IMG/VR virus record: IMGVR_UViG_3300034073_003340 | Coordinates: 371,857 to 435,856 of that record | Strand: one strand, 5' to 3' | Length of the DNA: 64,000 nucleotides | Shown: piece after piece, positions 2,842 through 20,725 of the stretch | How the letters are laid out: each line of letters starts with the position of its first letter | Numbering within the stretch: the stretch's first letter is position 1 | Position numbers and translations under genes: made by a program | Notes under the pieces: generated by a model | What the model was told of the DNA's origin: nothing | What the model saw: the letters and a program-made list of their open reading frames with translations, nothing else | Databases searched by the model: none

Positions 2842-3075
2842 TTAGCTTTGAAGTTTCAAAAACATCGCATATCGCTTTTCGATCTTTTCGATCGCTTCAA
2901 GATACGGTTTGGCGGCTTCTTCCGCCGCCAATCGTTTTGCTTGATTCATTTCCAGCTTGAGATCTTGTATTTGATTCCACATATCCGTGATAGCAGAACC
3001 TTCACTAAGGATCTCCTGCTCGGTTGACTCGGATTTACCCATCAACTGTTTACGGATATCAGCAAGAATACTCAT
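2842..3075 (-). CDS. Small coiled-coil hypothetical protein
   Basis: 77 aa, helical; start overlaps the stop of the upstream gene (ATGA-type coupling). Confidence 0.7.
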   Translation of the reverse strand: MSILADIRKQLMGKSESTEQEILSEGSAITDMWNQIQDLKLEMNQAKRLAAEEAAKPYLEAIEKIEKRYAMFLKLQS

Positions 3076-3524
3076 GCGAAGTTGACCTCAAACCCACACT
3101 GGCGCAGCTCTTCTATACTATTCAGTATACTCTTTTCACGATTTAGAGGATCATCGCCTGTCGAACGTTCCAGTTCAGCTGTTTGGACTGATGTCTCTGC
3201 TTTTTCAATAGCTGCCTTTGATTCCACCAAACCCAAATTGGTCATGCTCCGCAGGACCTTTATGGCCCGGATCTTGAATCCAATGCCGGATCCACCGCTT
3301 CGATAAAGATCATCATCAACAAGGCGAAATGAAATTCGGCCAGTAACTTGATATAGATTGGATAGCTTATTGAGGATCACGCGATCCTTCCATGACTTGC
3401 CAAGTGTTCCTTCAAGCGCAGAAATCGCTTGATTAGCAGTCTCCGCCCCAAACGTAAGGTTGACCACCCGCAGAAACTGCTGACTTATTTCGTCCAGCAA
3501 TTGGGTATCCACCTTGTTTTCCAT
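3072..3524 (-). CDS. Protein with C-terminal ribosomal protein bL12 (L7/L12) CTD-like domain
   Basis: KIRAIKVLRSMTNLGLVESKAAIEKA matches the bL12 consensus KI-x-VIK-x-VR-x2-TGLGLKEAK-x2-VE; ends ELRQCGFEV like the LEEAGA-x-V end of bL12; AGGAG RBS. Confidence 0.7.
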   Translation of the reverse strand: MENKVDTQLLDEISQQFLRVVNLTFGAETANQAISALEGTLGKSWKDRVILNKLSNLYQVTGRISFRLVDDDLYRSGGSGIGFKIRAIKVLRSMTNLGLVESKAAIEKAETSVQTAELERSTGDDPLNREKSILNSIEELRQCGFEVNFA

Positions 3525-3624
3525 AAAGTCTCCTATTACAAGACAGGTTGTATACTCTAGATAACATCTGTCAAGCTTCTAGATAAGTATTGTGATAGAA
3601 AGGAGACTTTGCTAGACAGAACGA

Positions 3625-4221
3625 ATGCCTTGGACCTTTGAACAGAGAATCCATAAAGCGTGTAATGCGTTGGTAGATCGTAGCCTGCTAGATGAGTCAC
3701 AGATCGAGACTCTTCGCAGACCACTATACTTTGGGCAGTACGCCTATAGTATTGGCTTATCTTTGAATCTGGCCCATTGGGGCGATTGGCGGGAAATCAA
3801 ACAATTTCTTCATGGAGTTTTTGAACCCATGAATGCCACAATTCAAAGCAATCAGCGGACCTATCAGTTTAATGCTTTTTCCAGCGATCCTAATATGCTT
3901 CGCTGGTTCATCCGTCATCAGTCCATGTTTACATTCAATCATATCCGCATTGTCGACAGATCGTGCTGGCATCTTAGTCTTCCCAAGCCTCGCCCCAAAG
4001 CGAAGTTTTATGGAGAGTTCGGATGGCGGTTCGAGTTTAAAGATTCAAAATGGGGATTGGATGCTGACAATGTTGCTGAACTTGATAAGCTGTCAGGCCC
4101 AGTCAAGCTGGTAACAAAACCACGCACCTTTCTCTATTTGGATAAGCTATCAGATGTTCTCATGTTCAAACTCATCGTAGGTGAGCAACTTCTGAGCTTG
4201 GATGACCGACATACCTTGTAG
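3625..4221 (+). CDS. Hypothetical protein with C-terminal FKL-family motif
   Basis: 198-aa ORF; ends FLYLDKLSDVLMFKLIVG. Confidence 0.7.
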   Translation: MPWTFEQRIHKACNALVDRSLLDESQIETLRRPLYFGQYAYSIGLSLNLAHWGDWREIKQFLHGVFEPMNATIQSNQRTYQFNAFSSDPNMLRWFIRHQSMFTFNHIRIVDRSCWHLSLPKPRPKAKFYGEFGWRFEFKDSKWGLDADNVAELDKLSGPVKLVTKPRTFLYLDKLSDVLMFKLIVGEQLLSLDDRHTL

Positions 4222-4227
4222 GTTTTG

Positions 4228-4257
4228 TTGACATCCAACCTCTCTCCGAGGTATAAA
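4228..4257 (+). promoter_or_regulatory. sigma70-type promoter for the SleB-like gene
   Basis: TTGACA-N18-TATAAA upstream of a GAGGTG RBS. Confidence 0.6.
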
Positions 4258-4290
4258 GGGAGTTCGGATCAACAATTCATGAGGTGATGG

Positions 4291-4833
4291 TTGAGATTTT
4301 TTGGATTAATGATGCTTTTCTTGTTCTGTTTGCTAACGCCAAAACCAGCCGAAGCAGGAACACTTACTAGATACCAGGGGCTGCATACTGCGGTTCGCAA
4401 AGCTGGACCACTGATTCCTCAGATTCAGCAAGCCAATGCGACCGATCAGGACCAGATGTTATGTATGGCACTTAACATCTATCATGAGATTCGAGGGGGG
4501 ACTTCTCGAGATCAGTGGGCGGTGGCGTTTGTGACTATCAATAGAACAAAACGGAGCGCGTTTCGTGCTCGTACGGTTTGTGCTGTTGTTTGGTCGCCAA
4601 GCCAGTTCTCTTGGACTCGTAAGCCAATGAAAGCACAGATACCGCGTGAGAAGTCAGCATGGGCAGAAAGCCAACGCAAAGCTGCCTTGATTCTTACAGG
4701 TGAGAGAATGAATGATCCTACGAACGGAGCGACGCACTTTAGTCGATCGCTCAATCAATCATGGGCTAGAAACCTGATTAACAAAGTTCGTATCGGAGCC
4801 CACTGGTTCGCGAGGTTGCCTGGCAGCAACTAG
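4291..4833 (+). CDS. SleB/Hydrolase_2-family cell wall hydrolase with signal peptide
   Basis: CMALNIYHEIRG (catalytic Glu), AVAFVTINR, TVCAVVW..QFSW and DPTNGATHF; hydrophobic N-terminus ending AEA. Confidence 0.88.
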   Translation: MRFFGLMMLFLFCLLTPKPAEAGTLTRYQGLHTAVRKAGPLIPQIQQANATDQDQMLCMALNIYHEIRGGTSRDQWAVAFVTINRTKRSAFRARTVCAVVWSPSQFSWTRKPMKAQIPREKSAWAESQRKAALILTGERMNDPTNGATHFSRSLNQSWARNLINKVRIGAHWFARLPGSN

Positions 4834-4858
4834 GATTTCCACAAACTCAAAAGAAAGA

Positions 4859-4887
4859 AGAGCCCGCCCCTAATAAGGGCGGGCTCT
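4859..4887. terminator. Bidirectional intrinsic terminator
   Basis: Stem AGAGCCCGCCC / GGGCGGGCTCT between convergent genes. Confidence 0.8.
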
Positions 4888-4911
4888 ATAGTTTTCGGAT
4901 AGTCTGATAAA

Positions 4912-5451
4912 TCAGCCAATATATAAGGCTGAATTTGAACCATGTTCAAAACATTCTACCGAAACAAGACGAACGTCCGGATTGACAGCATAACGACCCA
5001 ATTCGCCAGTCTTCATCTTTTCCAGTAGTTCAGATGCTTTATCATAAACCAACTTTGCTGTTAGTTCACATCCTACACCAGGAACGATCCTGAGGTTACA
5101 TACCCTTCCTTCTTCAAAAGGCTCAGCTTCGGAGTCAGGTTCTAGGCCATCGTAAACAGAATGAATGGAAAAGCTGGCTAGCTCTTTGAACTTTTCAAGG
5201 GCCGGATCATCCTTGGCGACCAAGATAGTGTGATCAAACATATAGTCTAGGTATTCCTTAATTGGCTTCATACCGCCAAAATCAAAACACCAGTTCTTTT
5301 CATCAAGGGTCTCTGATTCAAAGACAAACTTGAAGCCCAGACTATATCCGTGAAGCGTAGAACAGTGCGAGTGATTTGCCTTCCACTGACGGAAGCAACA
5401 GGAGAGACCACGGTCGGTTCCGTAGGTCTTGGTAGATTGAAACTTTGCCAT
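4912..5451 (-). CDS. queD: 6-carboxy-5,6,7,8-tetrahydropterin synthase (QueD/PTPS family)
   Basis: SCCFRQWKANHSHCSTLHGYS (Zn-binding His and Cys), WCFDFGG, FDHT, GCELTA and VECFEH..NSA. Start placed at MAKF (5451) rather than the track start 5466. Confidence 0.88.
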   Translation of the reverse strand: MAKFQSTKTYGTDRGLSCCFRQWKANHSHCSTLHGYSLGFKFVFESETLDEKNWCFDFGGMKPIKEYLDYMFDHTILVAKDDPALEKFKELASFSIHSVYDGLEPDSEAEPFEEGRVCNLRIVPGVGCELTAKLVYDKASELLEKMKTGELGRYAVNPDVRLVSVECFEHGSNSALYIG

Positions 5452-5550
5452 TTTTATGGTTCTCATTTTCGTGACACAGAATCTTTAAAGAGGGATGAGT
5501 CGTCGTCCTCTATCATTCATTTATATAGAACTGGACAAAAATCTGCAATA

Positions 5551-5579
5551 TAGACTTCACCAGAATTGAACCATATAAG
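5551..5579 (+). promoter_or_regulatory. sigma70-type promoter for the Smr gene
   Basis: TAGACT-N17-TATAAG, ending 8 nt upstream of ATG 5587. Confidence 0.45.
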
Positions 5580-5586
5580 GTCCAAT

Positions 5587-5961
5587 ATGTCACAGAATTT
5601 AACACCACAGGACCAAGCTATTTGGGATCAGGTTACCAAGGATGTGATACCTCTGGATAATCGCCCAGAGAAGCCCTGTGAGAACCTCGCTCGACTTAGG
5701 GTAGCCGAGCCCCGTAGCGTTCCTTTTAGCCCTCGTATGGACCTACACGGCGCTACAATACACGACGCTTTTGGTAGAGTACAGGAACATATCTATCAGG
5801 GTTCTCAGAATGGATATAAGAGGTTGATTATCATCACCGGACGTTCCGGACAAATCAACCAAGAACTACCAAGATGGCTAGAGAAAAACGCTCTGGTAAG
5901 ATCGGTCAAACAACTCTCAAACGGTGGATCATGGGAAGTAACAATCAAACCCGCTATATAG
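5587..5961 (+). CDS. Smr-domain (small MutS-related) endonuclease
   Basis: MDLHG...IIITGRSG...LPRWL...GGSW Smr core; N-terminal DQAIWDQVTKDVIPL resembles stand-alone proteobacterial Smr proteins. Confidence 0.85.
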   Translation: MSQNLTPQDQAIWDQVTKDVIPLDNRPEKPCENLARLRVAEPRSVPFSPRMDLHGATIHDAFGRVQEHIYQGSQNGYKRLIIITGRSGQINQELPRWLEKNALVRSVKQLSNGGSWEVTIKPAI

Positions 5962-6206
5962 ATGCTGATAAGCTCAAAGAAGCTTTGGCGTCCATGTACG
6001 CTGACTCTGGTACCAAATACACAAATGGGCAGATTGAGAGCCAAATCAATCAAATGATTTCTGGGGCGATCATGATCTCTCTCGAGGCTTTCAAGCACCA
6101 AATCATCGATGCGATCGATAAAGCATCAGTGCCCTACGACAAGTGTATGCTTTGTGTTCAGCGCGATTCCTGCATACCCCAGCATCCACTAGGTGAGAAA
6201 CCTTAG
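5874..6206 (+). CDS. Hypothetical protein (start uncertain, possibly 5931)
   Basis: ORF fills the gap downstream of Smr; C-terminal CxxC..C. Confidence 0.5.
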   Translation: MAREKRSGKIGQTTLKRWIMGSNNQTRYIDADKLKEALASMYADSGTKYTNGQIESQINQMISGAIMISLEAFKHQIIDAIDKASVPYDKCMLCVQRDSCIPQHPLGEKP

Positions 6207-6559
6207 ATCTCAATCTCTACATCACCACCATTGTCTTTGATATGACGCATGATGTCTAGACCATAAGGGGTGAACGTATAGGTTTCAATACTAGCAGGTT
6301 TGGATGAGTCGTCAGGCCAGTTCCAATCTATGCCACACTTGATCAGTCCAATCTTTTCAAGGCGGCGAAGTTCTGTAACTCTGAACCCTCGACAAATAGG
6401 AGCAACCTCCCTGGCTGTTAGAAAAAGCTCTTGACCTGGATCGCTTGCCAACTTCTTCATTACCAACCTGGAATTCATGACTTTGAGAAATTCATAGGCA
6501 GGTGATCCTTCGCTTATCACCGCGTAGTTGGATCCGTCGATTACCTCAATGTCATACAT
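6203..6559 (-). CDS. Hypothetical protein
   Basis: 118-aa ORF with GAGG RBS, last gene of a minus-strand run. Confidence 0.65.
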   Translation of the reverse strand: MYDIEVIDGSNYAVISEGSPAYEFLKVMNSRLVMKKLASDPGQELFLTAREVAPICRGFRVTELRRLEKIGLIKCGIDWNWPDDSSKPASIETYTFTPYGLDIMRHIKDNGGDVEIEI

Positions 6560-6573
6560 AATTGATCCTCTGA

Positions 6574-6873
6574 CTAATGGGTTTTACAGGCAAGCGTTCC
6601 TAGCCATACTAACTTGAAATAGATAGCATCTTGCTTGTTTTCAAAAGATATATTGTGAGGTGTCGTCGTATTATCAATGGAGTAACAAGCTTTGGTATGT
6701 TTGTTCAACCAAATTGTTTCTTCCATATTGGGTTTGCGAACCAGTCCAATCTGATATTGGTAATATTTGAGGGACTGGCGATGGGGATATCTCCAGACAC
6801 TAAGACGCTGGTGGTCTGCGGGAGTCAGCCGGTGCTTGATATCCCAATATTTCCGGCTCACTGTCCACTCCAT
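6574..6873 (-). CDS. FKL-family small protein
   Basis: IWLNKH...ISFENKQDAIYFKLVW. Confidence 0.7.
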   Translation of the reverse strand: MEWTVSRKYWDIKHRLTPADHQRLSVWRYPHRQSLKYYQYQIGLVRKPNMEETIWLNKHTKACYSIDNTTTPHNISFENKQDAIYFKLVWLGTLACKTH

Positions 6874-7148
6874 GTCAACTTGAACAATACAGCTTCATTG
6901 ACATCAGAAAACCAGATGTCAACCACAAATTGAAAAGCGATGTCGTTGCCATTGATATATATTGGCTCATAGGTTGAAACATAGACATCATTTTCGCAGT
7001 GGTCCCTTATCCATCTGCACATCTCGTCAGATAACGATGGAATAGATGATGACGATTCAATCTCAGGGTGATTTACTGGCAGGGCAACAGAGAAAAACCC
7101 AGCCTTTTTCCTGAATGTTTCGCTGCGGTTGTAGAGAAATATATTCAT
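6858..7148 (-). CDS. FKL-family small protein
   Basis: RWIRDH...IWFSDVNEAVLFKLTW; start overlaps the upstream stop. Confidence 0.75.
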   Translation of the reverse strand: MNIFLYNRSETFRKKAGFFSVALPVNHPEIESSSSIPSLSDEMCRWIRDHCENDVYVSTYEPIYINGNDIAFQFVVDIWFSDVNEAVLFKLTWSGQ

Positions 7149-7375
7149 AGGAAAGTTAGTTTAAACAGCAAAGCATGGTCAAGCTTTTCAAAACACCAAG
7201 TTACCACAAAATGAGGCTCGGGTGTTTTAACTAGTTTCCATCCCGCAGTCGTAACTCTACCTGTATTGTGGTCTTTCATCCATTGTTTGAACACCGGGGT
7301 CGCCACTGGATTATTTCTTATTCCCCTGGTTACCGTTAGACTGTTGGCCGGCACCGTGACATGATACTTTTTCAT
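7145..7375 (-). CDS. FKL-family small protein
   Basis: QWMKDH...WCFEKLDHALLFKLTFL; ATGA-type coupling. Confidence 0.75.
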   Translation of the reverse strand: MKKYHVTVPANSLTVTRGIRNNPVATPVFKQWMKDHNTGRVTTAGWKLVKTPEPHFVVTWCFEKLDHALLFKLTFL

Positions 7376-7635
7376 AGAAATGTCAACTTGAACATCGCCG
7401 CGTGGACCTGGTTGCTGAAGAAGATCTTGGTGGGAAGCTCTTTGATCAGGTTGTGACTAATGTTCATGATGATCCAGTGGTCACGAACTGGCGTGTATTG
7501 GTGTTGGTCAGGGTGGCGGAACTGTCGAGGCCCAACAACCCTTTCCAACCACTCTTCAGCTTCCTGGGTCAACTTTACCGCATAGCCTGGCATCCATACA
7601 CGATCATTGTCGCGATGGACGCTAATTGAAATCAC
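7372..7635 (-). CDS. FKL-family small protein
   Basis: EWLERV...IFFSNQVHAAMFKLTFL; ATGA-type coupling. Confidence 0.75.
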   Translation of the reverse strand: MISISVHRDNDRVWMPGYAVKLTQEAEEWLERVVGPRQFRHPDQHQYTPVRDHWIIMNISHNLIKELPTKIFFSNQVHAAMFKLTFL

Positions 7636-7922
7636 GAGAACTTGGCCTCGAACTCCTGAGCTACCTCGATTCGATCCTTGGGGAAGAACACGGTTGTGAT
7701 GTCGTGCTCGTCCGACGAACGCGAGGTCATGACCTCGATACCATGGCCCTCAATGAAGGCACGAGCCTCATCGCCGATCACCCAATGAAAGGTGTCCGGC
7801 CACTTGTGATCCGTTTCCTTCTTCATATGAGCGAAGCCGACCATGCGTACGGGAATACACAGGGCCTGCTTCGCCCGTATGCGCTCAAAAGCGGACATGA
7901 TCTCGGCGTGACGGTCGGTCAT
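7632..7922 (-). CDS. Small hypothetical protein, possible divergent FKL-family member
   Basis: Coupled ORF; ends VFFPKDRIEVAQEFEAKFS. Confidence 0.65.
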   Translation of the reverse strand: MTDRHAEIMSAFERIRAKQALCIPVRMVGFAHMKKETDHKWPDTFHWVIGDEARAFIEGHGIEVMTSRSSDEHDITTVFFPKDRIEVAQEFEAKFS

Positions 7923-9055
7923 GCTTCGATCGCCAGCAGTTCTTCCTTGGTTCGCGTAAACCGACTGAATACCCAGGCATTCTCCAGCATCCGCAGCCGC
8001 TGACCCATGGCCGGGCCAGGCTTCATACCCAGTGCCAGCAGATCCTTACCCGTTACCGGGAAAGTGGGAACCTTGAACGCCTCGGCATGACGTGCCAGCG
8101 AGGGCTCGCCTGCGATCTCCAGCATGGAAACCACATGATCCAGGGGGAACTTGTCGCGAGTCAGCATAACCTCAACCCGCTCTTCGGTCCAGTTCAGACC
8201 GCGATTGCGAATCAGGTTGCGCACCTTGGCTTCTTCGGCACTGCTCATCTTCCAAAACTTGAAGAAGTTCTCTTCATCGGTGTTGGCGATCAGCGTCGAC
8301 AGAGCAGCAACCGCATCATCCGACCGAGCCAGCTCAACGGGGTTGAACCGGAAAACACCCAGCGCACGATTGACGCCGGTCTTGAACATCGCGTCAACGA
8401 TCCGAACCCGAGCCGGCATCTTGGGATCCAGCAGCTTGCTCATTTCCTGCCAAAAACGCTCCACACTGACAAGGTTCAGTTTGTCCAGAACTTCGGCATC
8501 GCTGAACAGATCCAGATCGTCCTGGCTCATCGTGCTGTCGAAACGAGCAGCAAAGCGGAAGTAGCGCAGAATACGCAGGTAATCTTCCTGGACTCGCAGT
8601 TCCGAAACACCAACAAAGCGCACAACCTTGTTCTTCAGATCCTCGCGACCACCAAAGTAGTCGTAAACCAGACCGTTGAAGTCCATGCTCATTGCGTTGA
8701 TGGTCAGGTCGCGACGCTCAGCATCAATTTCGAAGCTGCGAGTAAACTCAACCTCGGCATGTCGACCGTCAGTCTCGACATCCACGCGCAGGGTGGTGAC
8801 CTCAAATGCTTCGCCGTCCACGACCAGCGTTGCCGTGCCGTGCTGGACACCGGTGGCAATGAAACCAAACTTGTTGGTGTTAGCAATAGCTTTCATTTCG
8901 TCCGGAGTAGCATCGGTGCAGAAGTCCACATCCTTGGGGACCACACCCAGCAGAGCGTCACGGACGCAACCACCAACAAAGCGGATCTCGAAACCGGCAG
9001 AAGAAAATGCTTCTCCCAGCTTGCGCGTTTCCGGTGTCATCAGCTTGTCCAGCAC
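7919..9055 (-). CDS. cca: Class II tRNA nucleotidyltransferase (CCA-adding enzyme)
   Basis: VGGCVRD, DVDFCT (DxD), EVTTLR, GRHAEV flexible loop, DAERRDLTINAM, GGREDL and EDYLRILRYFRF; no HD domain; GAGGAG RBS with GTG start. Confidence 0.92.
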   Translation of the reverse strand: MLDKLMTPETRKLGEAFSSAGFEIRFVGGCVRDALLGVVPKDVDFCTDATPDEMKAIANTNKFGFIATGVQHGTATLVVDGEAFEVTTLRVDVETDGRHAEVEFTRSFEIDAERRDLTINAMSMDFNGLVYDYFGGREDLKNKVVRFVGVSELRVQEDYLRILRYFRFAARFDSTMSQDDLDLFSDAEVLDKLNLVSVERFWQEMSKLLDPKMPARVRIVDAMFKTGVNRALGVFRFNPVELARSDDAVAALSTLIANTDEENFFKFWKMSSAEEAKVRNLIRNRGLNWTEERVEVMLTRDKFPLDHVVSMLEIAGEPSLARHAEAFKVPTFPVTGKDLLALGMKPGPAMGQRLRMLENAWVFSRFTRTKEELLAIEA

Positions 9056-9092
9056 GTCGATCTCCTCTTTGTTACAAGGGTAGTTCTAACAC

Positions 9093-13825: not shown

Positions 13826-13832
13826 ACATGAC

Positions 13833-13861: not shown

Positions 13862-13870
13862 CCAGTCATG

Positions 13871-13900
13871 GAAAAGGCCCCAGTTTCCCAGGGCCTTTCC
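13871..13900 (-). terminator. Intrinsic terminator with GAAA tetraloop after the TelA-like gene
   Basis: Minus strand AAGGCCCTGG-GAAA-CTGGGGCCTTTT. Confidence 0.8.
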
Positions 13901-13905
13901 GGTGA

Positions 13906-15775: not shown

Positions 15776-15801
15776 CGAAGTCCTCTTTGAATTTAGACTC
15801 A

Positions 15802-15829
15802 GTTATACTCCTAAATAGCAACGTGTCTA
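15802..15829 (-). promoter_or_regulatory. sigma70-type promoter for xpaC-like/telA
   Basis: TAGACA-N16-TATAAC followed by a GAGGA RBS. Confidence 0.5.
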
Positions 15830-15846
15830 CTTTTCTTTGGAAGAAA

Positions 15847-15876
15847 GGAAAGGGTGGCAATTTTGCCACCCTTTCC
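15847..15876. terminator. Intrinsic terminator after the flotillin gene
   Basis: Perfect 14-bp arms GGAAAGGGTGGCAA / TTGCCACCCTTTCC. Confidence 0.85.
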
Positions 15877-15895
15877 CGTAGAAGCCCTGTGAGGC

Positions 15896-17629
15896 TCACT
15901 GGTCGTCAGTGTGAATCCCAGCAAGTCGCTGTAGCTCTTCCTTGTCAGTAGGGGCGAGAGGTTCGTCCTTGACCCGACGAGCATTAGACTTTGCGGGAGC
16001 CTTTGCCGCAACAGCTTCACCGACCGGAATAACCTCGGCCATGCTGCTCAGCATACCGTTCATACCCTGGCTTAGATCAAGCCCCAGTTCCTTGGCTAGC
16101 GTGTCAACTACTGGAACCTGTAGTCGATAATTCAGCAGCGCATCAGTCATCTGAGTAGGGAGATTAGGACTGCCGTTTCCCACGGTTTCTCCCTCAACAG
16201 ATCCAGATGCCTGACCGCCCATACCGCCGTTCATATGAACTACACGGAAGCTATCAATCTTCTCGATGGGCTTGCCCATCTGCTCAAGAATAGCAGGCAG
16301 CTTTTCAATGAGCTTGAGTCGAATCTGCAGGGCGGCCTGTTCGGGCGACATTGTGTTTGCCGCTTCGTTGAGGGCGCGCTGACCTTCCGACTCAACTTCA
16401 TAACGCTTGGCTTCAGCCTCGATGAGGCGTTCCTTGGCCTTGGCCGACGCATCTGCTGCTGCTAGTTCAGCTTCAGCACGAATACGAACTGCTGCCGCAT
16501 CTTCCTGCGCGCGACCCTCGGCCGCAATCACAGCCACTCGCTGGTCTCGTTCTGCCCTGGCCGTTGCCTCAACAGTCTTAACCTCTTCGCTGGCCCGAAC
16601 CGCTTCAGCCCTGGCTGCGTCTGCTGCCGCGCGAGCTTCTGATTCTTCCTGAGACTTGGCAGCGACCTTGATTCGCTGATCCTGACTTGCCAGCTCAAGA
16701 TCTCGGGCAGCTTCGGCCTGCGCAATCTTAATCTTGCGCTCACTTTCAACCCTGGCTTCTTCAGTGGCCTGCTCGGCATGAATTACAGCAAGATCAGTTT
16801 CACGCTGGCGATCAGCACGGGTTCGCGCCAGTTCAGCTTCCTGTGCTGCTCGACGGGTTTCCACTTCACGCTGCTGTTCAAGCGTAGCAAATTCATCCTG
16901 CTGGCGAATTTCCAGAGAACGCTTGTTGGCCTCAAAGTTGCGCTGCTCAATAGCAACACGATTTTCCTGCTCGATATCGTTTCGCTCTTTCTTGCGCGTT
17001 TCCGTGACCGACGTCAGCTTGGCAAGACCTTCAGCGTCGAAAGCGTTGTTGGGATTGAAGTGTTCCACAGAAGTCTGATCAAGACCAGTCAGCGACACCG
17101 ATTCAAGTTCAAGACCATTGGCCTTGAGATCCTCGGCCGCCGTGGTCTTAACCGTCTTCACGAACTCAGCCCGCTGGGTGTGGAGGTCCTGCATGTCCAT
17201 TCCAGCAGCAACCGCGCGAAGGACGTCAACGAACTTACCTTCAATAAGTTCACTGAGCTGCTGGGGGTTCATAGTCCGGCGACCCAGTGTCTGTGCTGCC
17301 GCTGCGATGCTGCCATCGTCAGGTGAAACCCGAACATAGAACTCAGCCTTGACATCAACGCGCAGACGGTCCTTGGTGATAAGCGAGTCCTTGGCCTTTC
17401 GCTCAACAGTCAGACGCAGGGTCTGCATATTGATAGGAATGGTTTCATGAAACACCGGCAGCACAATTGCGCCGCCATCCTTGACGACTTTCTGTCCGCC
17501 CATACCAGTTCGGACGAATGCTTGTTCCTTTGAGGCTCGCTGGTAGAGCCTGGTCATGAAGATGACCATTGTGAGAATAACGACGATTGCCGCTACCACA
17601 ATGCCACCAATGAATGCTAGATTTTCCAA
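15896..17629 (-). CDS. Flotillin/SPFH-domain membrane protein (YqiK-like)
   Basis: N-terminal TM; YQRASKEQAFVRTGMGG, LITKDRLRVDVKAEFYVRV and GLELESVSLT..FNPNNAFDAEGL; long Ala/Glu coiled coil; GGAG RBS with TTG start. Confidence 0.92.
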   Translation of the reverse strand: MENLAFIGGIVVAAIVVILTMVIFMTRLYQRASKEQAFVRTGMGGQKVVKDGGAIVLPVFHETIPINMQTLRLTVERKAKDSLITKDRLRVDVKAEFYVRVSPDDGSIAAAAQTLGRRTMNPQQLSELIEGKFVDVLRAVAAGMDMQDLHTQRAEFVKTVKTTAAEDLKANGLELESVSLTGLDQTSVEHFNPNNAFDAEGLAKLTSVTETRKKERNDIEQENRVAIEQRNFEANKRSLEIRQQDEFATLEQQREVETRRAAQEAELARTRADRQRETDLAVIHAEQATEEARVESERKIKIAQAEAARDLELASQDQRIKVAAKSQEESEARAAADAARAEAVRASEEVKTVEATARAERDQRVAVIAAEGRAQEDAAAVRIRAEAELAAADASAKAKERLIEAEAKRYEVESEGQRALNEAANTMSPEQAALQIRLKLIEKLPAILEQMGKPIEKIDSFRVVHMNGGMGGQASGSVEGETVGNGSPNLPTQMTDALLNYRLQVPVVDTLAKELGLDLSQGMNGMLSSMAEVIPVGEAVAAKAPAKSNARRVKDEPLAPTDKEELQRLAGIHTDDQ

Positions 17630-17642
17630 AAAATTTCTCCTG

Positions 17643-18311
17643 TTAGATCTTACGGACTATAAAGGCAATTTCACGATCCTTGTGTGGCCCTAGTAACACC
17701 ACCTGTGAACCACTAGCAATATGTTCGTTGCTTTCTGAACAGACCACAAGATTATGGTCAGTCCCAAAATTATCAGTGAATCTAGCAATACCAAAATCCA
17801 CTGGACCTATAGGTCCAGCAGTCAGTATTCCGCTTGATCCGATCAAGCTTTCAACCTTGATCGCGCTTGTTTCATCTTTTGGAAGCAACGGAGCAATGGA
17901 GGCAGACAGTGACCTGACGATTGGCAAGGTGCAGGCTAAAACCACTGGGCCTACTAGAAGTGCTGGCATCAAGCCTGAAGCTATGCCATTATAGATCCAT
18001 TGTGCGCTATATCCCAAGATACTGTAGATACCAGAGAAAAGAATAATAAAAACAGTGCTTGGAACATGGCCAGGGTTGACCCATAGAAAAATTGAAGAAT
18101 GACCAGCTTCGAGATAATCCGGGACACCATTCCCGTTAGCGTCCAGGGTAAAATCAATTTCAGCGTCTACCTGGAATAGGTCATGACCTATACCAAAGAT
18201 GATTGAAATCATTCCCAGGATGAGCAAGGCTATAACAATACAGCCGGCGATTAGAAAGGCAGTGTTTTCTGCTGCGGTGATGAAATTCAGCATGTCCATG
18301 CTGGACTTCAT
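17643..18311 (-). CDS. YqiJ-like (NfeD-type OB-fold) membrane protein, flotillin partner
   Basis: Three hydrophobic segments; PKDETSAIKVESLIGSSG and DNFGTDHNLVV; immediately upstream of flotillin as in yqiJ-yqiK. Confidence 0.75.
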   Translation of the reverse strand: MKSSMDMLNFITAAENTAFLIAGCIVIALLILGMISIIFGIGHDLFQVDAEIDFTLDANGNGVPDYLEAGHSSIFLWVNPGHVPSTVFIILFSGIYSILGYSAQWIYNGIASGLMPALLVGPVVLACTLPIVRSLSASIAPLLPKDETSAIKVESLIGSSGILTAGPIGPVDFGIARFTDNFGTDHNLVVCSESNEHIASGSQVVLLGPHKDREIAFIVRKI

Positions 18312-18322
18312 AACAAGAGGAT

Positions 18323-18745
18323 TTACCTCTTGTCAATTGAATCGCTCCTAGTCTTTGGAATAATTTTTGAATCAGCCAATTTTGCTAATATTTGGCCATG
18401 ACAGGCCTGTGGGTGACACCAGCAACCTAGACGTTTGCCCTTTAGCTCGTGAAGGGCATCCATCAAATGCGGCTGCTCAACAATCCAATCGGCATATTGT
18501 TTGATACATTCTTCACGGGTGCCATCTCTACCAACCACAAATGGATTACCCCATTTGGTCTTGCGATCAATACGGACGTCATAATGATCTTCTTTGAGAT
18601 TAACTACCGTGGTGCTGGGCGGTGGCCAAGAGAATAGATCATCTTTCATCGATCTACTTATTATAGAGGTAGGGGACCTGGGAAGAATTTGCGACCCTGA
18701 CCCAGGTCCCCAAACGGTTAGCAAAGAGGGGTTTGCCACCGCCAA
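18323..18745 (-). CDS. DUF4326-like protein
   Basis: RIDRKTKWGNPF and LKGKRLGCWCHPQACHGQIL. Confidence 0.8.
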   Translation of the reverse strand: MAVANPSLLTVWGPGSGSQILPRSPTSIISRSMKDDLFSWPPPSTTVVNLKEDHYDVRIDRKTKWGNPFVVGRDGTREECIKQYADWIVEQPHLMDALHELKGKRLGCWCHPQACHGQILAKLADSKIIPKTRSDSIDKR

Positions 18746-18846
18746 TTAAGGTTTAGCAACTAAAAATGATTGCGCAACTCTTTTTGCGACGAACTGTGTG
18801 ATTATTCACAATCAGTGAATCAAATATTATTAACAATAAAGTAACG

Positions 18847-19200
18847 TTAAAATATTGCGTTGAGATGTTTTTCTATCTCACAGACCCTATAGGGTTTAGT
18901 TAAAATGGGCCATTGCTGAAATACTGTAGGTAGCTCTTGTGAATCCATGCCACTACATACCACAACAGGAATATTGAGCGCCGCTAGCATATTGGCTGCT
19001 CCGATGCTGGACTCGTCCCTGAGACCGACATCAAGAAACACACAAGAGATTTCATCCCCTTGCTCTTTGATGATAGTTTCAGCTTCAGAGTTGGTTGTAG
19101 CAGGTCCTAAAAGAGACAGCTCGTTGTCTTCACAAATGTCTTCCCATAAGAGATGAAGCAAGATTTGATCCTCAACGAGCAGAACACGGCCTTTAGCCAT
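18847..19200 (-). CDS. Single-domain response regulator (receiver only)
   Basis: VLLVED acidic pocket, FLDV phospho-acceptor Asp, PVVVCSG and ILTKPY; AGGAG RBS. Confidence 0.88.
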   Translation of the reverse strand: MAKGRVLLVEDQILLHLLWEDICEDNELSLLGPATTNSEAETIIKEQGDEISCVFLDVGLRDESSIGAANMLAALNIPVVVCSGMDSQELPTVFQQWPILTKPYRVCEIEKHLNAIF

Positions 19201-19216
19201 GGTAGTCTCCTTTGTG

Positions 19217-19741
19217 TTAGGACATCAGCTTTGCCAACATCACCTGATTTACTGTGCCATTGTCGATAATCATTGCGCTACTGGGCTTACCAACACGAAC
19301 CAATGCGCTAAGAACGTCTTCGTTGCCTTGCCCACTTTTAAAGAGCTTGGCATAAATGGTTCCCTTTTCACTGATTTGCTTTACCGTGCCCATTACCATA
19401 TCAACGCGAGCACCTTCTGTGCCGCGAGGAAACAGGATTGTGTGGCCGATTTCAATACGACGACCCATGAGGTCATTATAGAATGGGGTTGCTTTGTCTT
19501 CAGCAAAAAAGGTGCCACCTGCCCAATTGACCAAATGCTCAAGAAACGAGCCCTTTACCCAAAAGGGCCGCTTGCCCTTTACCGAGAGCCTATATTCATG
19601 AGCGCTATAATATTTGCTGGAAACCTGCATCACTCGGCCGATTGTTCCTGCTCGCGGCCCGGCAATCACCTTGGCATACTGCGGCCCATCTTCCATGGCT
19701 TTTAGCAGACCCATCGCAGTTTGGTAATTGTTAAGGCTCAT
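19217..19741 (-). CDS. Hypothetical protein with SH3/KOW-like beta domains
   Basis: KVIAGPRAGTIGRV KOW-like segment; GAGG RBS. Confidence 0.65.
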   Translation of the reverse strand: MSLNNYQTAMGLLKAMEDGPQYAKVIAGPRAGTIGRVMQVSSKYYSAHEYRLSVKGKRPFWVKGSFLEHLVNWAGGTFFAEDKATPFYNDLMGRRIEIGHTILFPRGTEGARVDMVMGTVKQISEKGTIYAKLFKSGQGNEDVLSALVRVGKPSSAMIIDNGTVNQVMLAKLMS

Positions 19742-19979
19742 ATACGACCTCTTTGAAATTTTTCAATTTTCTACGCTAGCAGAGCGCAACTAAAAAAGCA
19801 TGAATGCGTTAATAGCTGTTAAAGCATGATCTATAACCTAACGATCCACGAGTCTAGTGGATAGTCTGGAGCCGTCTAAAAAAAATTTACATATTGCCTG
19901 TTTGTTAGCTCTTGACATTTTGAAACTCACAGAAAAAGTGCAGGTCGAGATGGCCCACACTTTTCTGTGATTTTAGATT

Positions 19980-20165
19980 TCAGACTAGTTCGTTATCAAA
20001 CTGTAGACGAAATTTGAAGGCATCGTCGATGTTTGAAAATCCAACTTCTAAACCGTCAACTGCCGGATTCAAGACATAGCCCTGCACTTGCTCGTCTTCA
20101 AGCCATTTTTCAACTTTGGTTTTGGAATCGGGTCGTGCCCGCATAACCCACGAATTTGCGACCAT
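19980..20165 (-). CDS. FKL-family small protein
   Basis: GAGGT RBS; EKWLED...VGFSNIDDAFKFRLQF. Confidence 0.7.
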   Translation of the reverse strand: MVANSWVMRARPDSKTKVEKWLEDEQVQGYVLNPAVDGLEVGFSNIDDAFKFRLQFDNELV

Positions 20166-20244
20166 TATTACCTCAACTGGTTTCTTGCTAGAAAACGATT
20201 ACTAGCTGGTGTAACCAGGCTGAATCAATATTTTTGAAGGGTTT

Positions 20245-20690
20245 TGCGACGATCCGAAATAGACCTGCGTATCTATCATCAGTAGAGGAAAAACGGCCCG
20301 TTCTGTTGTTACGCCGGGACCATGCGCCACCTAGGGAGTTGATCCCCTAGGGATTGTTGAGGCATAGGAATCTACCGTAGCTTTTTCCTAACCTCGCTAC
20401 CCTTAGGCAGCGAGCGCCTCGACAACATCGTTGTCGTTGACAGTTACGTCGTTGATCTTTTCAGAACAGATGTTCCCAGGGAATCACCCCTCGTCATCGC
20501 TTCACTGGTTTCCCAGATCGTCTCTCAACCGTTCGCTTCCACGTCGATCCTAGTTCAGGCCCATCAGTTACAACGCCCACAGCGTCCGTGGTCTATATCC
20601 TGTCAATTCAGGACCGCGTTGTAAGTGGTGGACCTGCCGGGTACCGCCCCCGGGTCCGCTAGTCACTAATAAGTTTCGGTCATCAATAAC
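20245..20690 (-). ncRNA. ssrA: Circularly permuted (two-piece) tmRNA
   Basis: Minus strand carries first the T-arm CCGGG-GGCGGTA-CCCGG and 3' acceptor CAGGTCC-A-CCA (20636-20626), then a 63-nt intervening segment, then the 5' acceptor GGGCCTG (20562-20556), giving a 7-bp stem with a G3-U70 Ala determinant. Tag ORF 20441-20403 reads VNDNDVVEALAA-stop. Outer ends are approximate. Confidence 0.93.
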
Positions 20691-20696
20691 TTTTTC

Positions 20697-20725
20697 AATA
20701 TAGTAGATAAGGATCCATATGTCAA
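20697..20725 (-). promoter_or_regulatory. Near-consensus sigma70 promoter of the tmRNA
   Basis: TTGACA-N17-TATATT, placing +1 at about 20690. Confidence 0.8.

What the first reader, a model, noticed from the sequence alone, without database searches (positions are those of the whole stretch)
3072..20725. Dispersed ribosome-rescue and translation-maintenance kit
Within 18 kb lie a bL12-CTD protein, an Smr nuclease, a CCA-adding enzyme and a complete tmRNA. Together they map onto one established pathway: collided ribosome, Smr cleavage, tmRNA rescue by EF-Tu-delivered Ala-tmRNA, and maintenance of CCA ends. I infer that the phage installs its own trans-translation loop to clear ribosomes stalled by host tRNA- or mRNA-cutting abortive-infection systems. 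SmpB is not in the window, so the host copy would be needed.
Basis: inference. Interest (0 to 1): 0.72.

Follow-up and report, generated by a model that had tools for sequence, protein, structure and literature searches.

The report
Jumbo-phage translation genes, not one kit
A 436-kb phage of alphaproteobacteria really does carry a two-piece tmRNA, an SmrB-like nuclease, a CCA-adding enzyme and an L12-like protein within 18 kb, but they are separately transcribed, separately distributed accessory translation genes of a known kind rather than a demonstrated ribosome-rescue kit.

Summary
All four items exist where stated. The window is the last 64 kb of a 435,856-bp phage genome. That genome has 59 tRNAs, bS21, IF-3 and ClpX, and no SmpB.

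- **tmRNA:** complete, permuted and alpha-type. It has its own sigma-70 promoter, a G3:U70 acceptor stem, an encoded CCA and the tag VNDNDVVEALAA.
- **Smr protein:** 124 aa, of the SmrB type. It has an N-terminal hook-helix motif and DLHG.
- **"bL12" protein:** a virus-specific two-domain protein. It has an L12-CTD-like fold but no L12 N-terminal domain, so it is not a stalk orthologue.
- **CCA enzyme:** best explained by the tRNA array, since about 14 of the 59 tRNA genes lack an encoded CCA.

The four lie in four transcription units among about 25 unrelated genes. Their order is conserved only as part of general synteny in the Phosso / AP-J-162 / Atu_ph07 jumbo-phage lineage. Outside that lineage, tmRNA and CCA occur without Smr or the L12-like gene in at least 8 phages. 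Atu_ph07 has Smr and CCA but no tmRNA. CCA homologues occur in 483 phage records.

Cooperation between Smr and tmRNA in ribosome rescue is plausible but inferred. An anti-defence role has no support. The parts are known kinds, and the phage SmrB-like subfamily is the freshest element.

The parts
3072..3524 (-). Virus-specific L12-CTD-like protein (150 aa). It has an N-terminal three-helix bundle (residues 8-55) and a C-terminal beta-alpha-alpha-beta-alpha-beta domain (residues 63-149).
   Evidence: Pfam PF00542 at 29.1 bits, over residues 84-115 only. TIGR00855 L12 equivalog at 20 bits against a cut-off of 84.4. AlphaFold2 on 44 homologues gives pLDDT 88. Best structural match is the M. tuberculosis L7/L12 CTD: Z 7.0, rmsd 2.8 A, 71 of 72 residues, 22% identity; ClpS follows at Z 6.0-6.3. 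The nearest Atlas cluster is 100% viral.
4912..5466 (-). QueD/PTPS-like 6-carboxytetrahydropterin synthase. It lies between the L12-like and Smr genes and keeps that position in relatives.
   Evidence: Pfam PTPS at 48.8 bits; TIGR03367 QueD at 30.9 bits, below cut-off. Same position in Phosso, L064, L065 and L080.
5587..5961 (+). SmrB-like stand-alone SMR nuclease (124 aa). It has an N-terminal helix motif QDQAIW followed by VTKDVIPL, a short linker, and an SMR domain with DLHG and TGRSG.
   Evidence: Pfam Smr at 32.4 bits. Family alignments A3 and A5. The motif definition comes from the SmrB paper. Predicted complex with uS2 gives weak support.
7919..9055 (-). Class II tRNA nucleotidyltransferase (CCA-adding enzyme family). 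It heads a minus-strand run of six small ORFs (6203-7922).
   Evidence: PolyA_pol at 115 bits plus tRNA_NucTran2_2; NF009814 at 201 bits, below the 290 cut-off; phrog_2244. The translation shows GGCVRD, DVD, ERRD and EDYLR motifs.
20697..20725 (-). Sigma-70-type promoter of the tmRNA gene: TTGACA, 17-nt spacer, TATATT.
   Evidence: 11 of 12 consensus matches, the best site in 2500-21500; sequence.
20626..20690 (-). tmRNA acceptor piece: 5' strand of the inter-piece helix, T-arm CCGGG/GGCGGTA/CCCGG, 3' acceptor strand CAGGTCC, discriminator A and encoded CCA (3' end at 20626). The 5' end is approximate.
   Evidence: Rfam alignments; anatomy script.
20563..20625 (-). Intervening segment between the two tmRNA pieces, expected to be removed by processing.
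   Evidence: It lies between the CCA end and the GGGCCTG 5' acceptor strand. No RNA-library contig bridges it at high identity.
20290..20562 (-). tmRNA coding piece. The 5' acceptor strand GGGCCUG gives G3:U70. The tag reading frame runs 20441-20403: GUC resume codon, VNDNDVVEALAA, UAA. A 3' hairpin with a U-run lies near 20290-20320.
   Evidence: Short contigs from RNA libraries cover only 20295-20549 at 94-98% identity.

Best explanation
The stretch belongs to the large auxiliary (host-takeover and translation) region of a 436-kb jumbo phage. The phage falls in the Sinorhizobium phage Phosso / AP-J-162 / Agrobacterium phage Atu_ph07 lineage, so its host is probably an alphaproteobacterium. 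The four genes are independent accessory translation genes inherited together only because the whole region is syntenic in this lineage.

**Most likely roles**
- **tmRNA.** The two-piece tmRNA is transcribed from its own strong promoter and processed into an acceptor piece and a coding piece. It is then charged by host AlaRS (G3:U70) and delivered with host SmpB and EF-Tu. It tags stalled products with VNDNDVVEALAA for ClpX-type proteolysis. This keeps ribosomes recycling during a long infection in which the host's own supply may fall.
- **Smr protein.** It is a short-linker SmrB-type nuclease. Its N-terminal helix docks on uS2, and it cuts mRNA at collided ribosomes, creating the non-stop ends that tmRNA needs.
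- **CCA enzyme.** It matures the roughly 14 phage tRNAs whose genes lack CCA. It also repairs the CCA ends of the other tRNAs and of the tmRNA.
- **L12-like protein.** It is not a stalk subunit. It presents an L12-type helix 4/5 surface and may bind a translational GTPase or another partner. Its role is unknown.

**Shown:** presence, anatomy, conservation and distribution. **Inferred:** every biochemical step, and any cooperation between the genes.
For: **Genome context**
- The window is positions 371857-435856 of a 435,856-bp record with terminal repeats.
- The genome has 59 tRNAs, mostly at 292-326 kb.
- It has bS21 at 359.0 kb, and IF-3 and ClpX homologues at 362.0-363.8 kb.
- Peptide deformylase lies at 151 kb, and class II aaRS-like genes at 98, 306 and 319 kb.

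**Synteny**
- Phosso shares the order IF-3 / ClpX / topoisomerases / L12-like / PTPS / Smr / CCA / TelA / SPFH / PAAR.
- The same order and strands of the four genes occur in G001, G003, G006, L064 and L065.

**tmRNA**
- It passes two Rfam models.
- All 13 phage tmRNAs examined keep the T-arm, ACCA and G3:U70, with compensatory changes at acceptor pairs 4-7.
- All encode tags of the form xNDN...(L/V/I)AA.
- RNA-library contigs match only the coding piece.

**Smr**
- DLHG and W13 are invariant.
- The N-terminal (D/E)xx(L/I/M)W...VTKDVTPL motif is shared with 160-210-aa bacterial stand-alone Smr proteins.
- This matches the SmrB-clade hook helix described in bioRxiv 10.1101/2021.08.16.456513.
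- A complex prediction with S. meliloti uS2 scored 0.55, against 0.00 for the best of 3 controls. The tool's verdict was 'weak support'. In its calibration the mark was reached by 51 of 78 solved complexes and 2 of 108 mismatched pairs. Scores of 0.60 or under were seen in only 5 of those 78 solved complexes, and in all 4 mismatches that passed.
- The confident contacts are Smr residues 3-23 and uS2 residues 7-50. Because a SmrB-disome structure exists, this shows likeness rather than binding.

**CCA**
- About 45 of 59 tRNA genes encode CCA and 14 do not.
- CCA homologues occur in 483 GenBank phage records.

**Prior knowledge**
- Huge phages are known to carry tmRNA, CCA-adding enzymes and L7/L12 (PMC7162821).
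- The relative AP-J-162 is reported with a tmRNA, L7/L12, S21 and IF-3 (PMC11242549).
Against: - No experiment exists for any step.
- The host is unknown. Two scans of bacterial genomes gave no useful match.
- The phage Smr has GRS where SmrB has GxG, and its own hook motif has one acidic residue rather than two.
- Sequence similarity of the SMR domain to solved structures is weak: MutS2 at E 0.0012 with the family profile, and E. coli SmrA/YdaL at E 0.37.
- The RNA contigs come from relatives at 94-98% identity, at low depth, and one library may contain DNA.
- The micro-synteny L12-like / PTPS / Smr persists down to about 30% protein identity. This could reflect functional linkage that my reading underrates.
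Confidence: 0.6

Rival explanations
1. One reading: the four genes form a dedicated, co-selected trans-translation loop. The phage installs it to clear ribosomes stalled by host anticodon nucleases or mRNA-cutting abortive-infection toxins.
For: - All four genes are single-copy and lie within 17.3 kb (P about 2e-4 genome-wide).
- Order and strand are conserved in G001, G003, G006, Phosso, L064 and L065.
- Smr is SmrB-like, and in E. coli SmrB feeds tmRNA.
- Phosso has a polynucleotide kinase between its CCA and Smr genes.
- NADAR, a known counter to ADP-ribosylating toxins, lies in the same stretch.
Against: - The genes lie in four separate transcription units among about 25 unrelated genes.
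- tmRNA and CCA occur without Smr or the L12-like gene in G008/G009, XM05, EliS-L02, CcrColossus, Caulobacter C2, Bambus, MD18 and RcXuper.
- Atu_ph07 has Smr and CCA but no tmRNA or L12-like gene.
- Smr sits without CCA or an L12-like gene within 10 kb in the 637-kb and 259-kb contigs.
- This genome has no RtcB, polynucleotide kinase or RF-1-domain rescue factor.
- The conserved order is no more than the general synteny of the region.
Confidence: 0.12
2. The Smr protein acts on DNA as a nicking or repair-type SMR endonuclease, like SmrA or the MutS2 SMR domain. It would work in phage replication or recombination, next to the topoisomerase genes, and has nothing to do with ribosomes.
For: - Source annotations call relatives 'DNA-nicking Smr family endonuclease'.
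- In all relatives the gene lies a few kb from the topoisomerase genes.
- The profile's best PDB matches are MutS2 SMR domains.
Against: - The N-terminal hook-helix motif that defines the ribosome-binding SmrB clade is conserved and contains an invariant Trp.
- The predicted contact with uS2 runs through exactly that helix, although support is weak.
- B. subtilis MutS2 is itself a ribosome-collision factor (PMC10897456, listed).
Confidence: 0.15
3. The phage tmRNA is not mainly a rescue device. It would be a manipulator: a sponge for host SmpB, a way to retag proteins so as to alter host tagging and proteolysis, or a sensor of stalled ribosomes that times lysis.
For: - None of the 13 phage genomes tested encodes SmpB, so phage tmRNA must compete for the host protein.
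- Published speculation includes 'counteracting host tmRNA-related tagging' (PMC5648845) and sensing of host state (PMC7162821).
- Six of the 13 phage tags begin with Val rather than Ala.
Against: All 13 tags keep the NDN-type start and the (L/V/I)AA end, and all keep a G3:U70 acceptor stem with CCA. This is the pattern expected if charging, tagging and ClpX-type degradation are all under selection. A mere sponge would not need a conserved reading frame.
Confidence: 0.1
4. The L12-like protein is a true replacement stalk protein that enters host ribosomes and changes factor recruitment in favour of phage translation.
For: - It has the L12 CTD fold, at 22-26% identity to real L12 CTDs.
- The near-invariant residues K84, I85, I88, K89, R92, L99, K103 and E107 align with the conserved helix 4/5 residues of L12.
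- A phage bL12-domain protein was found in E. coli 70S preparations (PMC6375957).
Against: - The N-terminal 60 residues show no sequence similarity to the L12 dimerisation and L10-binding domain, and there is no Ala/Gly-rich hinge.
- The bL12 equivalog model scores 20 bits against a cut-off of 84.4.
- The N-terminal domain matches only a viral cluster.
- The same 30-aa motif occurs in 3-7 tandem copies in over 100 unrelated proteins, so it is a mobile module.
- ClpS is nearly as close in fold.
Confidence: 0.15

Closest known systems
Two-piece (circularly permuted) tmRNA of Alphaproteobacteria (Rfam RF01849 / RF04321), and phage-borne tmRNAs already reported in Sphingobium phage Lacusarx, Sinorhizobium phage AP-J-162 and huge phages
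   Same: - Permuted gene order, with the acceptor piece (T-arm and CCA) first, then an intervening segment, then the coding piece.
- G3:U70 in the acceptor stem.
- A tag of ANDN...LAA type ending in ALAA.
- Its own promoter.
- Dependence on SmpB encoded elsewhere.
   Different: - The resume codon is GUC (Val), not GCN (Ala).
- The gene stands alone beside a PAAR gene, whereas most other phages carry it inside the tRNA array.
- ARAGORN does not detect it.
- No bacterial genome held here has the same acceptor arm.
E. coli SmrB, the ribosome-collision mRNA endonuclease (proteobacterial stand-alone SMR clade)
   Same: - Architecture of N-terminal helix with the acidic-xxx-aromatic motif, then a linker, then a C-terminal SMR domain.
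- The DLH(G) catalytic motif.
- The predicted contact with uS2 uses the N-terminal helix.
   Different: - It is 124 aa, against 183 aa for SmrB and 160-210 aa for bacterial relatives, because the linker is cut to about 25 residues.
- It has TG(R/L)SG instead of the GxG loop.
- Overall sequence similarity is weak.
- There is no matching PHROG family, and no paper on phage SmrB-like proteins was found.
Virus-encoded bL12-domain proteins (Mizuno et al. 2019, PMC6375957) and cellular bL12
   Same: - The C-terminal domain has the bL12 CTD fold and keeps the conserved helix 4/5 residues.
- As in other phages, the domain is joined to unrelated sequence.
   Different: - The N-terminal three-helix domain is unrelated to the L12 N-terminal domain, and there is no hinge.
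- It forms its own family of about 150 aa, found in huge-phage contigs.
- Mizuno et al. found bL12 domains only in phage genomes under 80 kb among cultured phages.
Phage CCA-adding enzymes (phrog_2244) of tRNA-rich phages, e.g. Atu_ph07, Caulobacter phiCbK-like phages, roseophages
   Same: Class II nucleotidyltransferase head and body. It is 37-45% identical to those of Atu_ph07, Phosso and Caulobacter or Brevundimonas jumbo phages. It co-occurs with a large tRNA set.
   Different: Nothing notable. An HNH endonuclease gene is inserted next to it (9093-9821).
Translation gene complements of huge phages (Al-Shayeb et al. 2020, PMC7162821)
   Same: tRNAs, aaRS-like genes, IF-3, bS21, L7/L12-like protein, CCA-adding enzyme, QueD, tmRNA and peptide deformylase in one genome.
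   Different: Some of those phages carry SmpB. This lineage never does, in 0 of 13 genomes tested. An SmrB-like nuclease is not in that paper's list, as far as the passages read show.

Membership tests
Two-piece alpha-type tmRNA | Covariance-model score above the curated threshold | tested here: met
   RF01849 at 76.6 bits (gathering score 50) and RF04321 at 89.3 bits (gathering score 47), full-length model matches.
Two-piece alpha-type tmRNA | tRNA-like domain: T-arm, 7-bp acceptor stem with G3:U70, discriminator A, CCA | tested here: met
   GGGCCUG pairs with CAGGUCC, followed by ACCA. The same features are present in all 13 phage tmRNAs, with compensatory changes at pairs 4-7.
Two-piece alpha-type tmRNA | Tag reading frame with resume codon, stop codon and a C-terminal degron | tested here: met
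   GUC AAC GAC AAC GAU GUU GUC GAG GCG CUC GCU GCC UAA encodes VNDNDVVEALAA. All 13 phage tags end in (L/V/I)AA.
Two-piece alpha-type tmRNA | Expressed and processed into two RNAs | tested here: inconclusive
   RNA-library contigs of 192-272 nt cover only the coding piece (20295-20549) at 94-98% identity. Nothing covers the flanking genes, and nothing at high identity spans the intervening segment. The contigs come from relatives, at low depth, and one library may hold DNA.
Two-piece alpha-type tmRNA | SmpB partner | tested here: not met
   There is no PF01668 match in this genome or in 12 related or comparable phage genomes. The host copy would be needed. This does not affect the identity of the RNA.
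SmrB clade of SMR nucleases | SMR domain | tested here: met
   PF01713 at 32.4 bits, cut-off 25.7.
SmrB clade of SMR nucleases | DxH catalytic motif | tested here: met
   D52-L53-H54-G55 are invariant in 17 phage and 19 mixed phage/bacterial sequences.
SmrB clade of SMR nucleases | GxG RNA-binding loop | tested here: not met
   The phage family has TG(R/L)SG where bacterial relatives have TGKG. In E. coli the GAG mutant had no visible effect in vivo, so the weight of this feature is low.
SmrB clade of SMR nucleases | N-terminal helix with two acidic residues, three variable residues and one aromatic residue | tested here: met
   The family pattern is x(D/E)xx(L/I/M)W with an invariant Trp. Relatives show EDSELW, DEREMW and EELELW. 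This protein has QDQAIW, with one acidic residue. The motif aligns with the same motif in 160-210-aa bacterial Smr proteins (definition).
SmrB clade of SMR nucleases | Binds uS2 of ribosomes and cleaves mRNA at collisions | tested here: inconclusive
   The complex prediction with RS2_RHIME scored 0.55, against 0.00 for the best of 3 controls, and the verdict was 'weak support'. The mark was reached by 51 of 78 solved complexes and 2 of 108 mismatches. Scores of 0.60 or under were seen in only 5 of the 78 solved complexes and in all 4 mismatches that passed. The result may reflect memory of the solved SmrB-disome. The interface is Smr residues 3-23. Cleavage is not testable here.
Ribosomal protein bL12 | C-terminal domain fold with conserved helix 4/5 residues | tested here: met
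   VIA-align Z 7.0, rmsd 2.8 A, 71 of 72 residues of the M. tuberculosis L7/L12 CTD. Foldseek top hits are L12. K84, I85, I88, K89, R92, L99, K103 and E107 are near-invariant.
Ribosomal protein bL12 | N-terminal dimerisation and uL10-binding domain plus flexible hinge; full-length equivalog score | tested here: not met
   TIGR00855 scores 20.1 bits against a cut-off of 84.4, and only residues 84-114 match. The N-terminal domain is a three-helix bundle whose only related cluster is viral. It should not be filed as bL12.
Class II CCA-adding enzyme | Nucleotidyltransferase head domain and motifs A-D | tested here: met
   PF01743 at 115 bits. The translation contains GGCVRD, DVD, RRD and EDYLR.
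Class II CCA-adding enzyme | CCA-adding rather than A-adding or poly(A) activity | tested here: inconclusive
   The best model is the CCA equivalog NF009814 at 201 bits, below its cut-off of 290. PcnB and A-adding models score lower.
Co-selected gene module ('kit') | Co-transcription or tight adjacency | tested here: not met
   The genes lie on both strands in four units, with a bidirectional terminator at 4859-4887. The tmRNA has its own promoter.
Co-selected gene module ('kit') | Joint presence or absence across independent lineages | tested here: not met
   All four occur together only in the Phosso-like subclade. Other combinations elsewhere are tmRNA with CCA only, Smr with CCA only, and Smr alone within 10 kb.

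The most novel reading that the evidence does not exclude
Jumbo phages of Rhizobiales-type hosts run a partly self-encoded ribosome quality-control pathway. A phage-specific short-linker SmrB-like nuclease docks on host uS2, possibly beside phage bS21, and cuts mRNA at collided ribosomes. The phage two-piece tmRNA borrows host SmpB, AlaRS and EF-Tu and tags the products with a phage-specific tag for a ClpX-type unfoldase, which the phage also encodes 28 kb away. This would be the first viral collision-sensing rescue pathway. It could be tested directly in Phosso on S. meliloti.
Probability: 0.25. Interest if true: 0.7.

Novelty: new member of a known kind. Interest (0 to 1): 0.4.

Why it matters
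The finding shows that a whole lineage of 260-640-kb phages carries an SmrB-type collision nuclease. It also shows that two-piece tmRNAs are near-universal in tRNA-rich phages of Alphaproteobacteria, always without SmpB, and are often missed by ARAGORN.

If the Smr-tmRNA pairing is functional, phages maintain ribosome quality control during takeover and not only initiation and decoding. A cultured relative, Phosso on S. meliloti, would make this testable.

The finding is also a caution. Closeness of thematically related genes in a large syntenic phage genome is weak evidence for a functional module.

Tried and rejected
- ARAGORN on the window found no tRNA or tmRNA. The permuted tmRNA is seen only by Rfam models.
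- Megablast of the region against GenBank phages gave only a 37-39-nt hit. It lies in the tmRNA tag region of Erythrobacter phages, not in a protein gene.
- phmmer of Smr and of the L12-like protein against PDB sequences gave only marginal hits.
- PHROGs has no family for either protein.
- AlphaFold2 on 6 sequences of the L12-like protein gave pLDDT 53 and was discarded.
- Two host or donor searches of bacterial genomes failed. One, using the exact acceptor arm, gave 0 hits. The other, using the tag-region 19-mer, gave 9 hits, about the number expected by chance, one of them in a Paracoccaceae MAG.
- Whole-record searches of the ENA, NCBI and JGI contigs behind L063, L064 and L066 were not possible. 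tmRNA or CCA elsewhere on those contigs therefore remains untested.
- TAG recoding was considered because of the two CUA-anticodon tRNAs. Coding density rises no more with TAG read as sense (0.835) than with TGA read as sense (0.841), from 0.807 under the standard code, so there is no sign of recoding.
- The idea that the tmRNA is an attP remnant was rejected. The gene is complete, with a promoter, both pieces and a tag frame.
- A ClpS-like adaptor role for the L12-like domain was considered (Z 6.0-6.3 to ClpS) and ranked low. Identity to ClpS is 5-10%, against 22-26% to L12.

Full report
**1. What the window is.**
The window is positions 371857-435856 of a 435,856-bp virus record with direct terminal repeats, with G+C about 45%. 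The genome carries 59 tRNA genes by ARAGORN, nearly all in an array at 292-326 kb. The closest cultured relatives by protein similarity and gene order are Sinorhizobium phage Phosso (469 kb) and Agrobacterium phage Atu_ph07 (490 kb). A published relative, Sinorhizobium phage AP-J-162, is 471.5 kb with 47% G+C. It is reported with 66 tRNAs, one tmRNA, L7/L12, S21 and IF-3 (PMC11242549). The host is therefore probably an alphaproteobacterium, which fits the alpha-type tmRNA. Two scans of bacterial genomes did not identify it.

**2. The observation.**
All four items are real; scores and coordinates are given under the observation check.
- Each is single-copy in the genome.
- SmpB is absent from the whole genome.
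- Four random points fall within 17.3 kb of this genome with P about 2e-4.

**3. What lies between and around the four genes.**
The four genes are interspersed with unrelated genes:
- a conserved 198-aa viral protein and a SleB-like cell-wall hydrolase;
- a QueD/PTPS-like gene;
- six small ORFs and an HNH endonuclease;
- NADAR and a staphylococcal-nuclease-like gene;
- TelA, an XpaC-like protein, a flotillin and its YqiJ/NfeD partner;
- DUF4326 and a receiver-domain protein;
- a PAAR protein directly upstream of the tmRNA promoter.

They lie on both strands. A bidirectional terminator sits at 4859-4887. The tmRNA has the best sigma-70 promoter match of the region: TTGACA, 17 nt, TATATT, 11 of 12. 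There are therefore four transcription units, not an operon.

Other translation genes lie outside the window:
- Just upstream: bS21 at 359.0 kb, and IF-3 and ClpX homologues at 362.0-363.8 kb.
- Further away: peptide deformylase at 151 kb, and class II aaRS-like genes at 98, 306 and 319 kb.
- Not found anywhere: RtcB, RF-1 domain proteins (RF, ArfB, PrfH), EF-Tu-type GTPases and peptidyl-tRNA hydrolase.

**4. The tmRNA.**
The gene is circularly permuted, like alphaproteobacterial ssrA. Its parts, in order:
- **Acceptor piece.** It ends in the T-arm CCGGG/GGCGGUA/CCCGG, the strand CAGGUCC, discriminator A and CCA, with its 3' end at 20626.
- **Intervening segment.** About 63 nt.
- **Coding piece.** It starts with GGGCCUG at 20562, which gives G3:U70, the alanine identity pair.
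- **Tag frame (20441-20403).** It reads VNDNDVVEALAA then UAA.

I compared 13 phage tmRNAs: this one, G003, G004, G006, G008, Phosso, MD18, RcXuper, XM05, EliS-L02, CcrColossus, Bambus and Caulobacter phage C2.
- All keep the T-arm, ACCA and G3:U70.
- Acceptor pairs 4-7 covary: GGGCCUG/CAGGUCC, GGGUCUG/CAGAUCC, GGGGAUG/CAUCUCC, GGGGCCG/CGGCUCC, GGGGCUG/CAGCUCC and GGGGGCG/CGCCUCC.
- All tags have an NDN-type start and an (L/V/I)AA end.

This is the signature of selection on charging, tagging and ClpX-type degradation. It argues against a mere decoy.

RNA-library contigs give modest support for expression. Short contigs from a soil metatranscriptome (272 nt) and two other libraries (208 and 192 nt) match only 20295-20549, the coding piece, at 94-98% identity. 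Nothing covers the flanking genes, and no high-identity contig crosses the intervening segment. This is consistent with a stable processed RNA in near relatives. The depth is low, and one library may contain DNA.

**5. The Smr protein.**
The family consists of proteins of about 124 aa, found on phage-like contigs up to 637 kb. No PHROG family matches it.
- Invariant residues include W13, D52-L53-H54-G55 and T84-G85-x-S87-G88-Q89.
- The phage proteins align end to end with 160-210-aa bacterial stand-alone Smr proteins. They share the N-terminal (D/E)(D/E)xxLW..VTKDVTPL segment and differ mainly by a much shorter linker.
[quoted passage not shown] That helix hooks onto uS2 and is required for ribosome binding. 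DLH is the catalytic motif (bioRxiv 10.1101/2021.08.16.456513).
- This phage has QDQAIW. Relatives have EDSELW, DEREMW and EELELW.

A complex prediction with S. meliloti uS2 scored 0.55, against 0.00 for the best of 3 controls. The tool's verdict was 'weak support'. The mark was reached by 51 of 78 solved complexes and 2 of 108 mismatched pairs. Scores of 0.60 or under occurred in only 5 of those 78 solved complexes and in all 4 mismatches that passed. The confident contacts were Smr residues 3-23 and uS2 residues 7-50. Because a SmrB-disome structure exists, this shows likeness and not binding.

Two points differ from SmrB. The GxG loop is GRS here. Similarity of the SMR domain to solved structures is weak. 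I conclude that the protein works like SmrB with moderate confidence.

**6. The L12-like protein.**
Sequence similarity to bL12 is confined to about 30 residues (83-114), which correspond to helices 4 and 5 of the L12 CTD. The bL12 equivalog model scores 20 bits against a cut-off of 84.4.

A profile search of 1.84 billion proteins found two kinds of relative:
- about 40 full-length clusters of 140-180 aa;
- over 100 proteins carrying 3-7 tandem copies of only the 30-residue motif. The motif is therefore a mobile module.

With 44 homologues AlphaFold2 gives pLDDT 88. The model has a three-helix N-terminal bundle (residues 8-55) and a beta-alpha-alpha-beta-alpha-beta C-terminal domain (residues 63-149).
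- The C-terminal domain matches real L12 CTDs best: Z 7.0, rmsd 2.8 A, 22% identity.
- ClpS is next at Z 6.0-6.3 with 5-10% identity.
- The N-terminal domain resembles only a viral 'L7/L12 C-terminal family' cluster.

The near-invariant residues K84, I85, I88, K89, R92, L99, K103 and E107 align with conserved helix 4/5 positions of L12. From my own knowledge, that is the surface bL12 uses to bind translational GTPases. Mizuno et al. already showed that phage bL12 domains are usually embedded in unrelated proteins and were acquired many times (PMC6375957).

This protein is therefore not a bL12 orthologue. It has an L12-type CTD, and its function is unknown. Nothing connects it specifically to delivery of Ala-tmRNA.

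**7. The CCA enzyme.**
It is a class II nucleotidyltransferase, 37-45% identical to those of Atu_ph07, Phosso and the Caulobacter and Brevundimonas jumbo phages. Homologues occur in 483 GenBank phage records, most of them from hosts that are not alphaproteobacteria. About 45 of the 59 phage tRNA genes encode CCA and 14 do not. Maturation and repair of the phage tRNA pool is a sufficient explanation. Repair of the tmRNA end is a possible extra.

**8. Distribution.**
- **All four, same order and strands:** G000, G001, G003, G006, Phosso. L064 (389 kb) and L065 keep the L12-like / PTPS / Smr / CCA order; the tmRNA could not be checked there.
- **CCA and tmRNA only (truncated contig):** the 44-kb fragment G004 holds only CCA and the tmRNA, with CCA cut by the contig end.
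- **Smr / PTPS / L12-like together:** a 3-kb contig whose L12-like protein is only 32% identical.
- **Smr and CCA only:** Atu_ph07.
- **tmRNA and CCA only:** G008/G009, CcrColossus, Caulobacter C2, Bambus, MD18, RcXuper, with the two genes 4 to 100 kb apart. In most of these phages, and in the Erythrobacter phages below, the tmRNA sits in or beside the tRNA array.
- **tmRNA without Smr or the L12-like gene, CCA not tested:** the Erythrobacter phages XM05 and EliS-L02.
- **Smr beside the topoisomerase genes, with no CCA or L12-like gene within 10 kb:** contigs of 637 kb and 259 kb.
- **SmpB:** 0 of 13 genomes.

The conserved arrangement is thus the general synteny of one lineage, with individual genes gained and lost.

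**9. Verdict.**
The mechanism I consider most likely is set out under the best explanation. In short, these are independent accessory translation genes. A tmRNA that depends on host SmpB and an SmrB-like nuclease could plausibly cooperate in ribosome rescue. The CCA enzyme serves the tRNA array, and the L12-like protein has no known role.

A dedicated anti-defence kit is possible but has no specific support (confidence about 0.12). The kinds of gene are known from huge phages (PMC7162821) and from the relative AP-J-162. The phage SmrB-like subfamily, and the constant absence of SmpB beside phage two-piece tmRNAs, are the points worth following up.

Noticed in passing
outside the window: genome positions 99130-99204 and 293258-293333: Two tRNA genes with a CUA anticodon (amber suppressors; ARAGORN labels them 'Pyl'). 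One lies next to a class II aaRS-like gene at 97981-98460. TAG is the rarest stop (46 of 485 long ORFs), but coding density gives no sign of TAG recoding.
   Followed up: partly
window 12853-18311: A run of stress- and membrane-type genes: NADAR, staphylococcal-nuclease-like, TelA, XpaC-like (Halogen_Hydrol), flotillin/SPFH and its YqiJ/NfeD partner. TelA and SPFH are also conserved in Phosso. NADAR and SNase recur in L064, and NADAR with SIR2 in L065. The run may be a counter-defence or envelope-stress module.
   Followed up: no
L057 (Brevundimonas phage Bambus, 1376-1633) and L058 (Caulobacter phage C2, 1478-1787): Rfam tmRNA_permuted detects two-piece tmRNAs at 57.9 and 73.9 bits, beside tRNA genes. 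The paper describing the Brevundimonas phages reports that ARAGORN found no tmRNA (PMC10070969). ARAGORN also misses the tmRNA in this window. Phage two-piece tmRNAs are probably under-annotated.
   Followed up: partly
window 20420-20458; L044 1983-2045; L045 6001-6039: The tag-coding stretch of this tmRNA is 82-95% identical at nucleotide level to that of 150-kb Erythrobacter phages XM05 and EliS-L02, which are otherwise unrelated. Six of the 13 phage tags share a VNDN start, three of them the longer VNDNDVV, with a Val resume codon. This suggests that tmRNA genes are exchanged among phages or derive from one donor lineage.
   Followed up: partly
L051 2127-2594 (Phaeobacter phage MD18): A GOLLD RNA (169.6 bits), with an embedded tRNA, lies directly next to the phage tmRNA gene.
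   Followed up: no
proteins P0040, P0043, P0044, P0048 and over 100 others: Proteins of 190-1056 aa carry 3-7 tandem copies of just the 30-residue L12 helix 4/5 motif. This repeat architecture is probably mis-annotated as ribosomal protein L7/L12.
   Followed up: no
window 9093-9821: An HNH endonuclease gene is inserted immediately upstream of the CCA-enzyme gene. An HNH gene also sits beside CCA in L064. Phosso has no HNH gene there and instead has a polynucleotide kinase on the other side of CCA, which this genome lacks.
   Followed up: partly
window 3625-4833: A 198-aa protein with no family match (Atlas clusters 95-100% viral) and a SleB-like cell-wall hydrolase sit between the L12-like and QueD genes. 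They keep that position in relatives, and the hydrolase is next to Smr even in the 259-kb contig L066.
   Followed up: partly
outside the window: genome 358984-359121, 361974-362486, 362550-363797: bS21, IF-3 and ClpX homologues lie 8-13 kb upstream of the window start. The SmrB paper notes that bS21 and SMR genes are linked in several bacteria and that SmrB contacts bS21. Co-occurrence of bS21 and Smr in this phage lineage was not tested systematically.
   Followed up: partly
window 18323-19200: A DUF4326 protein, and a 117-aa stand-alone receiver-domain protein whose best NCBIfam matches are response regulators of PhyR or DivK type. The latter is a possible host-signalling mimic in a phage of Alphaproteobacteria.
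   Followed up: no
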